From: Saccostrea cucullata
Lineage: Eukaryota
Direction of reading: 5' to 3'
Assembly: GCF_032062105.1 (NCBI RefSeq)
Contig: NW_026923116.1
Coordinates: forward strand, 124,001 to 188,000
Length of the DNA stretch: 64,000 nucleotides
Of this stretch, positions 233-1,226 are shown in pieces. Position 1 is the first letter of the stretch; each line of letters starts with the position of its first letter. Below the pieces are notes generated by a model. The model was not told the DNA's origin and did no database searches. It saw only the letters and a program-made list of their open reading frames with translations. The position numbers and the translations under genes are program-made.

Positions 233-1226
233 TATTTACCAGTATGGGTTGTAGCCTCTAGATGTCCAGTTTTTTGGAGGCCAGACAATGTTTCTACTTA
301 CCAGTATGGGTGGTTGCCTCCAGATGTCCAGTTTTTTTGGAGGCCAGACAATGTTTCTACTTACCAGTATGGGTGGTTGCCTCCAGATGTCCAGTTTTTT
401 TGGAGGCCAGACAATGTTTCTACTTACCAGTATGGGTGGTTGCCTCCAGATGTCCAGACTGTGTTTCTACTTACCAGTATGGGTGGTTGCCTCCAGATGT
501 CCAGTTTTTTGGAGGCCAGACAGTGTTTCTACTTACCAGTATAGGTGGTAGCCTCCAGATGTCCAGTTTTTGGAGGCCAGACAGTGTTTCTACTTACCAG
601 TATAGGTGGTAGCCTCCAGATGTCCAGACAGTGTTTCTACTTACCAGCATAGGTGGTAACCTCCAGATGTCCAGTTTTTGGAGGCCAGACAGTGTTTCTA
701 CTTACCAGTATAGGTGGTAGCCTCCAGATGTCCAGACAGTGTTTCTACTTACCAGTATGGGTGGTAGCCTCCAGATGTCCAGTTTTTGGAGGCCAGACAG
801 TGTTTCTACTTACCAGTATAGGTGGTAGCCTCCAGATGTCCAGTTTTTTGGAGGCCAGACAATGTTTCTACTTACCAGTATGGGTGGTTGCCTCCAGATG
901 TCCAGTTTTTTTGGAGGCCAGACAATGTTTCTACTTACCAGTATGGGTGGTTGCCTCCAGATGTCCAGACTGTGTTTCTACTTACCAGTATGGGTGGTTG
1001 CCTCCAGATGTCCAGACAATGTTTCTACTTACCAGTATGGGTGGTTGCCTCCAGATGTCCAGACTGTGTTTCTACTTACCAGTATGGGTGGTTGCCTCCA
1101 GATGTCCAGACTGTGTTTCTACTTACCAGTATGGGTGGTTGCCTCCAGATGTCCAGACAATGTTTCTACTTACCAGTATAGGTGGTAGCCTCCAGATGTC
1201 CAGTTTTTTGGAGGCCAAACAGTGTT
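233..1226. repeat. Tandem array, 18 copies including the real exon end, of 47-bp and 61-63-bp units made from the USP32 exon 3' end plus donor
   Basis: Unit tacttaccagtat(a/g)ggtggt(a/t)gcctccagatgtccag[ttttttggaggccag]aca(a/g)tgtttc; its reverse complement encodes ...[12 protein letters not shown] followed by GTAAGTA. Confidence 0.95.

What the first reader, a model, noticed from the sequence alone, without database searches (positions are those of the whole stretch)
233..1226. Splice-donor echo array: a USP32 exon 3' end plus its GTAAGTA donor repeated 18 times into the intron
Seen: the intron next to exon 1174-1365 is made of 17 extra copies of the exon's final ~40-55 nt, each followed by a donor (GTAAGTA in 16 copies, GTAAATA in the distal one). 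Two unit lengths occur, 47 bp and 61-63 bp; the short one drops the segment between two ccag words. Read-through of the first donor meets a stop after 16 codons (ORF 1123..1344). Inference: the exon faces a ladder of equally strong competing 5' splice sites, and use of a distal one would give a premature stop before the His box. Copy number could therefore tune USP32 output, or the array may show intron growth from exon-junction duplication.
Basis: partly seen in the sequence, partly recalled or inferred. Interest (0 to 1): 0.8.

Follow-up and report, generated by a model that had tools for sequence, protein, structure and literature searches.

The report
Minisatellite repeating a USP32 splice donor
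A 941-base tandem repeat in an intron of a USP32-like gene copies the end of the preceding exon, with its splice signal, 17 more times; it is real, but it belongs to a kind of repeat already described ('mirage' or F7-type minisatellites), and the RNA data at hand suggest it is simply spliced out.

Summary
On the minus strand, exon 1174-1365 of a USP32-like gene (EF-hands, DUSP, UCH) ends in CTG|GTAAGTA. It is followed by 17 head-to-tail units (8 of 47 bp, 9 of 61-63 bp), giving 18 donors: 17 GTAAGTA and a distal GTAAATA. Each unit is about 9 nt of intron start plus 39-54 nt of exon tail.

The kind is known. Human F7 IVS7, IFI6, CBS, LMNB2 and PDGFA carry minisatellites whose first monomer spans an exon-intron boundary. 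Lancelet 'mirages' are the same thing. In F7 only the first donor is used.

PolyA RNA from a close relative splices the upstream introns correctly and puts no reads on the mapped array (from the fourth unit outward). Raw DNA reads that agree with the assembly cover the array at flank-like depth.

'Intron growth by junction duplication' is supported. 'A donor ladder tuning USP32 output' is not supported, though not excluded.

This genome holds many such arrays. Arrays with three or more GGTAAGT are several-fold more numerous than reversed-motif controls. Five or six of nine sampled arrays start at exon ends of unrelated conserved genes. The scan's first readers noted the same pattern on many other pieces of this genome.

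Verdict: a new member of a known kind, of moderate-to-low interest on its own.

The parts
1174..1365 (-). Exon n of a USP32-like gene (192 nt, 64 codons, phase 0 at both ends). It encodes ...[25 protein letters not shown] of the USP catalytic domain.
   Evidence: Open frame. PDB hits to USP15/4/11 at E 1e-12. The 5' edge at 1365 is confirmed by 14+1 spliced RNA reads joining 1365 to 1732 (L001 2865>3232). The 3' edge is inferred from the donor consensus, the reading phase and the next exon IINLKRF.
1174..1227 (-). Exon tail (54 nt) that is homologous to the exon-derived part of every unit; with the first 9 nt of the intron it forms the first monomer of the minisatellite.
   Evidence: Alignment of the tail to each unit gives 0-5 mismatches.
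240..1173 (-). 17 intronic units, each starting GTAAGTAGAAAC (a near-optimal 5' splice site, 9 of 11 positions complementary to the U1 5' end). 8 units are 47 bp and 9 are 61-63 bp. There are two sequence types: the exon type (CTACCACCT) in the middle and a CAACCACCC type at both ends.
516..843 (-). 108-bp higher-order repeat (61 + 47 bp) present three times at 97% identity. It is a sign of expansion by unequal exchange inside the array.
   Evidence: TRF row with period 108 and score 635.
233..239 (-). Distal 18th donor, GTAAATA, followed by non-repeated intron sequence. This is the outer edge of the array and follows its most diverged copy.
   Evidence: The last unit has 5 mismatches to the exon tail.
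1..232 (-). Non-repeated part of the same intron. It continues off the window for 366 nt to the acceptor of exon n+1.
   Evidence: Next exon and its acceptor (ttttttcag) found at contig 123633 = L001 1133.
1732..1850 (-). Exon n-1 (context only). Its donor AGG|GTACAT is much weaker than the repeated donor.
   Evidence: RNA joints 1365>1732 and 1850>2115. Donor comparison.

Best explanation
This is a junction-spanning minisatellite of the type called 'mirage' in lancelets and known from human F7 intron 7.

Origin (inferred). A ~61-bp segment holding the last ~53 nt of the exon and the first ~9 nt of the intron was duplicated in tandem. It then expanded by unequal exchange or replication slippage. 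A deletion between two CTGG words produced a 47-bp variant that spread, and a 61+47 block was amplified as a 108-bp higher-order unit.

Effect on splicing (inferred). Every copy carries the donor, so the authentic 5' splice site is followed by 17 pseudo-sites in almost identical context. The spliceosome uses the most upstream one, the only donor that closes the 192-nt exon against its acceptor. This follows exon definition and the 5'-to-3' 'oriented scanning' shown for F7. The rest leaves with the lariat.

Net effect. The intron grew from about 600 to about 1540 nt with no change to the mRNA. The array is most likely a neutral, length-variable by-product of a duplication process that is common in this genome.

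Shown versus inferred. Shown: the anatomy, the gene identity, DNA read support, and the absence of array sequence from a relative's polyA RNA. Inferred: exclusive use of donor 1 in this species, the mode of expansion, and neutrality.
For: Anatomy and unit composition.

Gene identity: EF-hand, DUSP and UCH exons lie in order on the minus strand, and the exon hits USP15/4/11.

DNA reads: raw reads of X21 agree with the reference at every listed site where the relative differs. They cover the array at mean depth ~2.2 against ~1.7 in non-repeat flanks (my arithmetic on table 2).

Relative's DNA: X1 contigs join the outer flank to an inner-type unit (L001 1692>2249). They lie on the array at k-mer depth 28-76 against 8-13 for single-copy sequence, so the relative seems to have an array with a different structure.

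RNA: runs X22 and X23 give 14, 6 and 6 spliced reads for the three upstream introns and depth ~12 on exon n. Depth is 0 in every bin lying wholly inside the array (window 301-1050) and in the non-repeated intron just beyond it.

Precedent: F7 IVS7 and four other human genes (PMC1557585), and lancelet mirages that 'do not generate aberrant mRNAs' (PMC3087553, PMC3902484).

Genomic context: the same gene holds a second, decayed array of the same design at 34268-34521. Five or six of nine sampled GGTAAGT arrays elsewhere in the genome start at exon ends of unrelated conserved genes. This argues for a general mutational by-product and against a USP32-specific device.
Against: The read junction exon n > exon n+1 was not among the rows listed, so use of donor 1 is not shown directly. 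The RNA is from a relative (~93-95% identical in exons), not from the assembled species. NMD would hide mis-spliced products. The bin with the first 2.6 units has a little depth (0.6) that I could not assign. All 17 pseudo-donors are near-optimal, and in the F7 minigenes only perfect-consensus pseudo-sites drew some splicing away (PMC1557585). In IFI6 and CBS the first two pseudo-sites are used.
Confidence: 0.75

Rival explanations
1. Decoy-donor ladder. The 17 pseudo-donors compete with the authentic one. A share of transcripts is spliced from a distal donor, gains a premature stop and is destroyed by NMD, so repeat number sets USP32 output.
For: All donors share the same 12 nt and 9 of 11 positions complementary to U1. 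Donor 2 gives TGA at the junction, and donors 3-18 include an in-frame TAA. F7 repeat-number variation is reported as associated with factor VII levels (PMC7849579). IFI6 and CBS use their first two pseudo-sites (PMC1557585).
Against: RNA depth is zero from the fourth unit outward in two polyA runs, at exon depth ~12 and ~3. F7, LMNB2, PDGFA and the lancelet mirages use only the authentic site (PMC1557585, PMC3902484). Similar arrays sit in unrelated housekeeping genes: an Arf-family GTPase, a tubulin, an alpha-mannosidase and Rubicon. That is hard to square with gene-specific tuning.
Confidence: 0.1
2. Useful U1-binding array. The repeated strong donors recruit U1 snRNP inside the intron and help the gene, for example by reinforcing the upstream donor or suppressing premature cleavage and polyadenylation. 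On this view, arrays with strong donors are kept or expanded by selection.
For: Arrays with three or more perfect GGTAAGT are several-fold more numerous than reversed-motif arrays: 24 families against 3 over the same contig range. The first 13 nt of all 17 units are invariant.
Against: With ~10 variable columns in ~61, an invariant 13-nt block is expected by chance about 9% of the time (my estimate). The second array in the same gene has let its donors decay to GTGAGC, ATTAAG and GTAATA. There is no direct test of U1 binding or of any benefit.
Confidence: 0.07
3. Assembly artefact. The array is an over-extended or mis-joined repeat that does not exist at this size.
For: Repeats of this kind are sometimes mis-assembled; the lancelet BflGb6 mirage was (PMC3087553). 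Only short reads were available here.
Against: Raw reads agreeing with the reference cover the array at about the depth of the flanks, which implies a copy number of the assembled order. A relative also carries multi-copy units next to the same flank.
Confidence: 0.03

Closest known systems
Human F7 intron 7 VNTR (37-bp minisatellite whose first monomer spans the exon 7-IVS7 boundary; PMC1557585)
   Same: A head-to-tail array starts in the exon, so the authentic donor is followed by identical pseudo-donors. The pseudo-sites are functional in principle but are normally silent.
   Different: The F7 monomer holds only 4 nt of exon against 39-54 nt here. F7 has 5-9 copies against 18 donors here. 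The F7 donor is weak (UGG|gugggu), whereas this one is near-optimal (CUG|guaaguag). Donor choice was tested experimentally in F7 and not here.
Lancelet 'mirage' minisatellites (Adh3, globins, TnC, PGBD5; PMC3087553, PMC3902484)
   Same: Tandem duplications of exon-intron boundaries with units of 10-160 bp. Edge copies are the most diverged, copies are homogenised within the array, splicing is undisturbed, and several occur per genome.
   Different: It is not known whether this genome is a lancelet; its GC content of 34% and size of 1.17 Gb do not suggest one. In the papers I found, mirages were described gene by gene and never counted genome-wide.
Human IFI6 (6-16) intron 2 and CBS intron 13 minisatellites (as summarised in PMC1557585)
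   Same: Many reiterated donors follow the authentic one (25 pseudo-sites in IFI6; 15-20 repeats in CBS).
   Different: In those genes the first two pseudo-sites are used constitutively. Here any distal donor would give a premature stop, and no such RNA was seen.
Intron gain or growth by tandem duplication across AG|GT (the Rogers model, as cited in PMC3087553; variable internal tandem repeats at exon-intron boundaries in human paralogues, PMC2812944)
   Same: A tandem duplication supplies ready-made splice sites, and the duplicated material becomes intronic.
   Different: No new intron is created here. An existing intron is lengthened by 941 nt.

Membership tests
Minisatellite with first monomer spanning an exon-intron boundary (F7 IVS7 type / 'mirage') | Head-to-tail tandem array of 10-200 bp units | tested here: met
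   TRF periods of 47, 61-63 and 108 at 95-98% matches. 17 units listed.
Minisatellite with first monomer spanning an exon-intron boundary (F7 IVS7 type / 'mirage') | The first monomer contains the authentic exon-intron boundary (unit = exon tail + intron start) | tested here: met
   The exon tail 1174-1227 aligns to every unit with 0-5 mismatches. The exon is real: it shows USP homology and RNA-confirmed splicing at its 5' edge. Its 3' edge is inferred from the donor, the phase and the next exon.
Minisatellite with first monomer spanning an exon-intron boundary (F7 IVS7 type / 'mirage') | The authentic donor sequence is reiterated in the intron | tested here: met
   16 identical copies of CTG|GTAAGTAGAAAC and one variant, GTAAATA.
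Minisatellite with first monomer spanning an exon-intron boundary (F7 IVS7 type / 'mirage') | Regular splicing undisturbed: only the most upstream donor (or the first few) is used | tested here: inconclusive
   PolyA RNA of a relative shows no depth from the fourth unit outward. The exon n > n+1 junction reads were not listed, and no RNA of the assembled species was available.
Minisatellite with first monomer spanning an exon-intron boundary (F7 IVS7 type / 'mirage') | Length or structure varies between alleles or individuals | tested here: inconclusive
   A contig from the relative joins the outer flank to an inner-type unit (L001 1692>2249), which implies another arrangement. There are no long reads and no second haplotype in the assembly.
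USP32 (ubiquitin-specific peptidase with EF-hands and DUSP) | Domain order EF-hands, DUSP, UCH catalytic domain in one gene | tested here: met
   Pfam on minus-strand open frames: EF-hand at 40373-40681 and 39982-40182, DUSP at 36513-36719, UCH at 34033-34221 and 29125-29523. Exon n hits the USP15/4/11 catalytic domains. Orthology to USP32 by tree was not tested. The His box lies off the window.

The most novel reading that the evidence does not exclude
This array is one of several hundred in a genome where minisatellites are preferentially seeded at 5' splice junctions. On this reading, either exon-intron boundaries are hot spots for tandem duplication, or arrays of strong U1 sites are retained, and this process is a major route of intron growth in the lineage.

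The evidence is suggestive. GGTAAGT triple arrays number 24 families against 3 for the reversed motif, 7 for an acceptor motif and 5 for GGTGAGT over the same contig range. The excess roughly equals the share of arrays that sit on real exon ends.
Probability: 0.35. Interest if true: 0.6.

Novelty: new member of a known kind. Interest (0 to 1): 0.35.

Why it matters
On its own the array is a clean natural test of 5' splice-site choice. Eighteen near-optimal donors share the same 40-54 nt of upstream context, so only position can tell them apart. If donor 1 alone is used, that would extend the F7 'oriented scanning' result to strong donors and to a non-mammalian animal.

It also shows an intron more than doubling in length in one step-wise process. 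The wider value lies in the genome. If junction-seeded arrays are truly over-represented, the mutational origin of mirages becomes testable with hundreds of cases, where until now there has been only a handful. That origin is called 'unclear' in PMC3087553.

Tried and rejected
1. Pfam on the 64-aa exon alone gave no family. PDB sequence search and Pfam on other exons settled the gene identity instead.

2. I first read the unit as wholly exon-derived, with an internal GTAAAA turned into GTAAGTA. I dropped this because the distal copy is followed by GTAAATAGA, which matches the first 9 nt of every unit. A boundary-spanning segment (9 nt of intron + ~53 nt of exon) is therefore simpler.

4. Raw match counts of the genome-wide patterns are dominated by a few big satellites: GATGGTA 1401 against 333, GGTGAGT 1209 against 1571. 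I therefore rejected the 13-fold figure as a measure and counted distinct families in the listed rows instead.

6. Within the window alone, 2 junction arrays among ~20 TRF arrays is not clearly more than chance. I expect ~0.4-0.8, by my own estimate.

7. The open-frame criterion is also met by 4 of 8 single GGTAAGT sites in this gene-rich region. So '6 of 9 arrays at exons' is not an enrichment over genic donors by itself.

8. The 28-bp repeat at 40899-40956 has a donor-like GGTAAGG but lies 100 nt inside an intron and does not copy an exon end.

9. The original mirage paper (PMC117041) is not held.

10. The species was not identified.

Full report
**What is there**

On the minus strand the window carries a USP32-like gene. 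Pfam finds EF-hand exons at 40373-40681 and 39982-40182, a DUSP exon at 36513-36719, and UCH exons at 34033-34221 and 29125-29523. The exon at 1174-1365 is open for 64 codons and ends ...DIWRLPPIL. It matches the catalytic domains of USP15, USP4 and USP11 at E about 1e-12. Pfam alone does not recognise so short a piece.

The exon ends in CTG|GTAAGTA. A motif scan finds that donor 17 times, with G at 1173, 1126, 1079, 1032, 985, 938, 875, 813, 752, 705, 644, 597, 536, 474, 427, 364 and 301. There is one variant, GTAAATA, at 239.

Cutting the sequence at the donors gives 17 intronic units: 8 of 47 bp and 9 of 61-63 bp. The short form lacks the 14-16 nt between two CTGG words. TRF reports the array at 95-98% matches and finds a 108-bp higher-order unit (61+47) three times at 516-843. 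An array like this is far beyond chance.

**Anatomy of the unit**

The last 54 nt of the exon (1174-1227) align to the part of each unit after its first 9 nt, with 0-5 mismatches. The first 9 nt (GTAAGTAGA) match what follows the outermost copy (GTAAATAGA, then unrelated intron). So the duplicated segment was about 53 nt of exon plus about 9 nt of intron.

Two sequence types occur. The exon type lies in the middle of the array (units 9, 11 and 12, with 0-1 mismatches). The other type lies at both ends, including the five 47-bp units next to the exon. The outermost unit is the most diverged. This is the usual picture of a minisatellite turned over by unequal exchange, with edge copies left out of homogenisation.

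The next exon (IINLKRFQF...) starts at contig position 123633, 366 nt beyond window position 1, behind a good acceptor. The intron is thus about 1540 nt, of which 941 nt is array. The unit was not found elsewhere in the genome.

**Consequences of using another donor**

All 17 GTAAGTA donors have 9 of 11 positions complementary to the 5' end of U1. By contrast, the donor of the preceding exon has 5 of 11. Use of donor 2 adds 47 nt and gives TGA at the junction. Donors 3-18 include an in-frame TAA at 1125-1123.

**Reads**

No run held most of the stretch. I laid four runs on L001:1-4500 (L001 coordinate = window + 1500).

- Run X21 (raw genomic reads, organism B) agrees with the reference at every listed site where organism A differs, so it is the assembled species or very close to it. 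Its depth over the array bins averages about 2.2, against about 1.7 in non-repeat flanking bins (my arithmetic). This fits the assembled copy number and argues against an artefact.
- Run X1 (contigs, organism A) differs from the reference at 12 of 180 positions in exon n, so A is a relative. One of its contigs joins the outer flank (L001 1692) to an inner-type unit (L001 2249). Contigs on the array have k-mer depth 28-76, against 8-13 for single-copy parts. The relative thus seems to carry an array with a different arrangement.
- Runs X22 and X23 (polyA RNA, raw reads, organism A) give canonical minus-strand joints for the three upstream introns: window 1365>1732, 1850>2115 and 2203>2653. Depth is about 12 and 3 on exon n. 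Depth is zero in every 150-nt bin lying wholly inside the array (window 301-1050) and in the 300 nt of non-repeated intron just beyond it.
- The bin that holds the exon's last 27 nt and the first 2.6 units has depth 0.6.

So array sequence is absent from mature RNA at this depth, but direct proof that donor 1 is the one used is missing. The RNA is also not from the assembled species.

**What is known**

The kind is described. Borensztajn et al. (PMC1557585) studied the human F7 intron 7 minisatellite, whose first 37-bp monomer spans the exon-intron boundary. They showed with 50 constructs that the pseudo-sites are functional but only the most upstream one is selected ('oriented scanning'). Only pseudo-sites with a perfect consensus drew some splicing away.

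Their introduction lists IFI6 (25 pseudo-sites, the first two used), CBS (15-20 repeats, two pseudo-sites used), LMNB2 and PDGFA (only the authentic site used). In lancelets the same structures are called 'mirages' (Adh3, globins, TnC, PGBD5). They do not disturb splicing, are length-unstable, and were proposed as a route to new introns (PMC3087553, PMC3902484). F7 repeat-number variation is listed among the polymorphisms associated with factor VII levels (PMC7849579), so even the 'tuning' idea has a precedent.

**Genome context**

The same gene has a second, older array. The exon ending ...KTIAPLKLR|GTAAGTTAAC is followed by six or seven decayed 37-bp copies at 34268-34521, and their donors have drifted.

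Genome-wide, a pattern of three GGTAAGT spaced 30-60 nt apart gave 2504 matches, against 189 for the reversed pattern. Raw matches are unreliable, however, because a few satellites dominate them. Counting distinct families in the rows listed up to about contig C2289 gives:

| Motif | Families |
|---|---|
| GGTAAGT | 24 |
| TGAATGG (reversed control) | 3 |
| TTTCAGG (acceptor motif) | 7 |
| GGTGAGT | 5 |

Of nine distinct GGTAAGT arrays fetched, six have a long open frame with an upstream acceptor ending exactly at the first donor. Five of these encode recognisable domains: Arf, the Rubicon PI3K-binding domain, EF-hand, tubulin and the alpha-mannosidase middle domain. Acceptor-side arrays also exist.

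The scan's first readers noted 'splice-junction' arrays on many other pieces of this genome. I take those notes as leads only; my own counts point the same way.

Caveats:
- Four of eight single GGTAAGT sites near this gene also pass the open-frame test.
- Within the window, two junction arrays among about twenty is not clearly above chance.
- A random-sample test could not be run.

**Verdict**

The array is real and striking, but it is a new member of a known kind. The best reading is a neutral junction-spanning minisatellite that lengthened the intron and is spliced out from the first donor (confidence 0.75). The donor-ladder or NMD-tuning reading keeps about 0.1.

The more novel possibility is that this genome seeds minisatellites preferentially at 5' splice junctions. 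It is suggested but not established.

Noticed in passing
window 34268-34600 (minus strand): A second, older array of the same design in the same gene. The exon ending ...KTIAPLKLR|GTAAGTTAAC is followed by 6-7 decayed 37-bp copies (27 nt of exon + 10 nt of intron), with donors drifted to GTGAGC, ATTAAG, GTAATA and GTAAGA. The next exon ([13 protein letters not shown]...) follows at about 34140.
   Followed up: partly
L001 1166-1384 (contig C5253 123666-123884, same intron, just off the window): A very high-copy short element. Read depth is 200-700 in raw DNA reads against ~2 for the flanks, there are thousands of contig depth units in the relative, and opposite-strand joints occur at 1187/1380. 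It looks like a MITE with inverted ends, and it is also abundant in polyA RNA.
   Followed up: no
window 52248-62503 (minus strand): A second gene upstream of USP32. It has a SET domain (Pfam SET, 2e-13, at 52777-53049), a post-SET-like ...[13 protein letters not shown] at 52248-52418, an RRM-like exon at 59961-60161, and a 716-codon open frame at 57220-59367. This is a SETD1-like histone methyltransferase.
   Followed up: partly
window 1362-1420: A weak AT-rich 21-bp repeat (2.9 copies, 82%) lying across the acceptor of exon n, with two ...ACAG sites. It may be a small acceptor-side echo or just a low-complexity pyrimidine tract.
   Followed up: no
L044 (G000:C1160:34808-37907); also C1160 near 106-108 kb and C3704: An acceptor-side junction array. 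Its 47-bp units end in TTTCAG|GCCTTACAGAAGTTTTG, and the last one runs into a 47-codon open frame (ALQKFWKDHREENK...). The same unit occurs at several loci.
   Followed up: partly
G000:C202:4640-4880 and C1272:10229-10610; C1236:12836-13066 and C1664:16906-17134: GGTAAGT-bearing minisatellites that recur at different loci with the same unit. These are dispersed (probably element-borne) families and not junction arrays. They inflate motif-based counts.
   Followed up: no
window 14535-16953, 22657-23498, 31484-32400: Arrays of 146-168-bp units in USP32 introns, near a long Helentron-like open frame noted by another reader at 6219-13571. They may be element-associated satellites.
   Followed up: no
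window 55841-56110 (minus strand): An acidic low-complexity coding stretch (runs of E with S and D) that TRF reports as 3-, 12-, 15- and 36-bp repeats. It is probably an exon of the SETD1-like gene.
   Followed up: no
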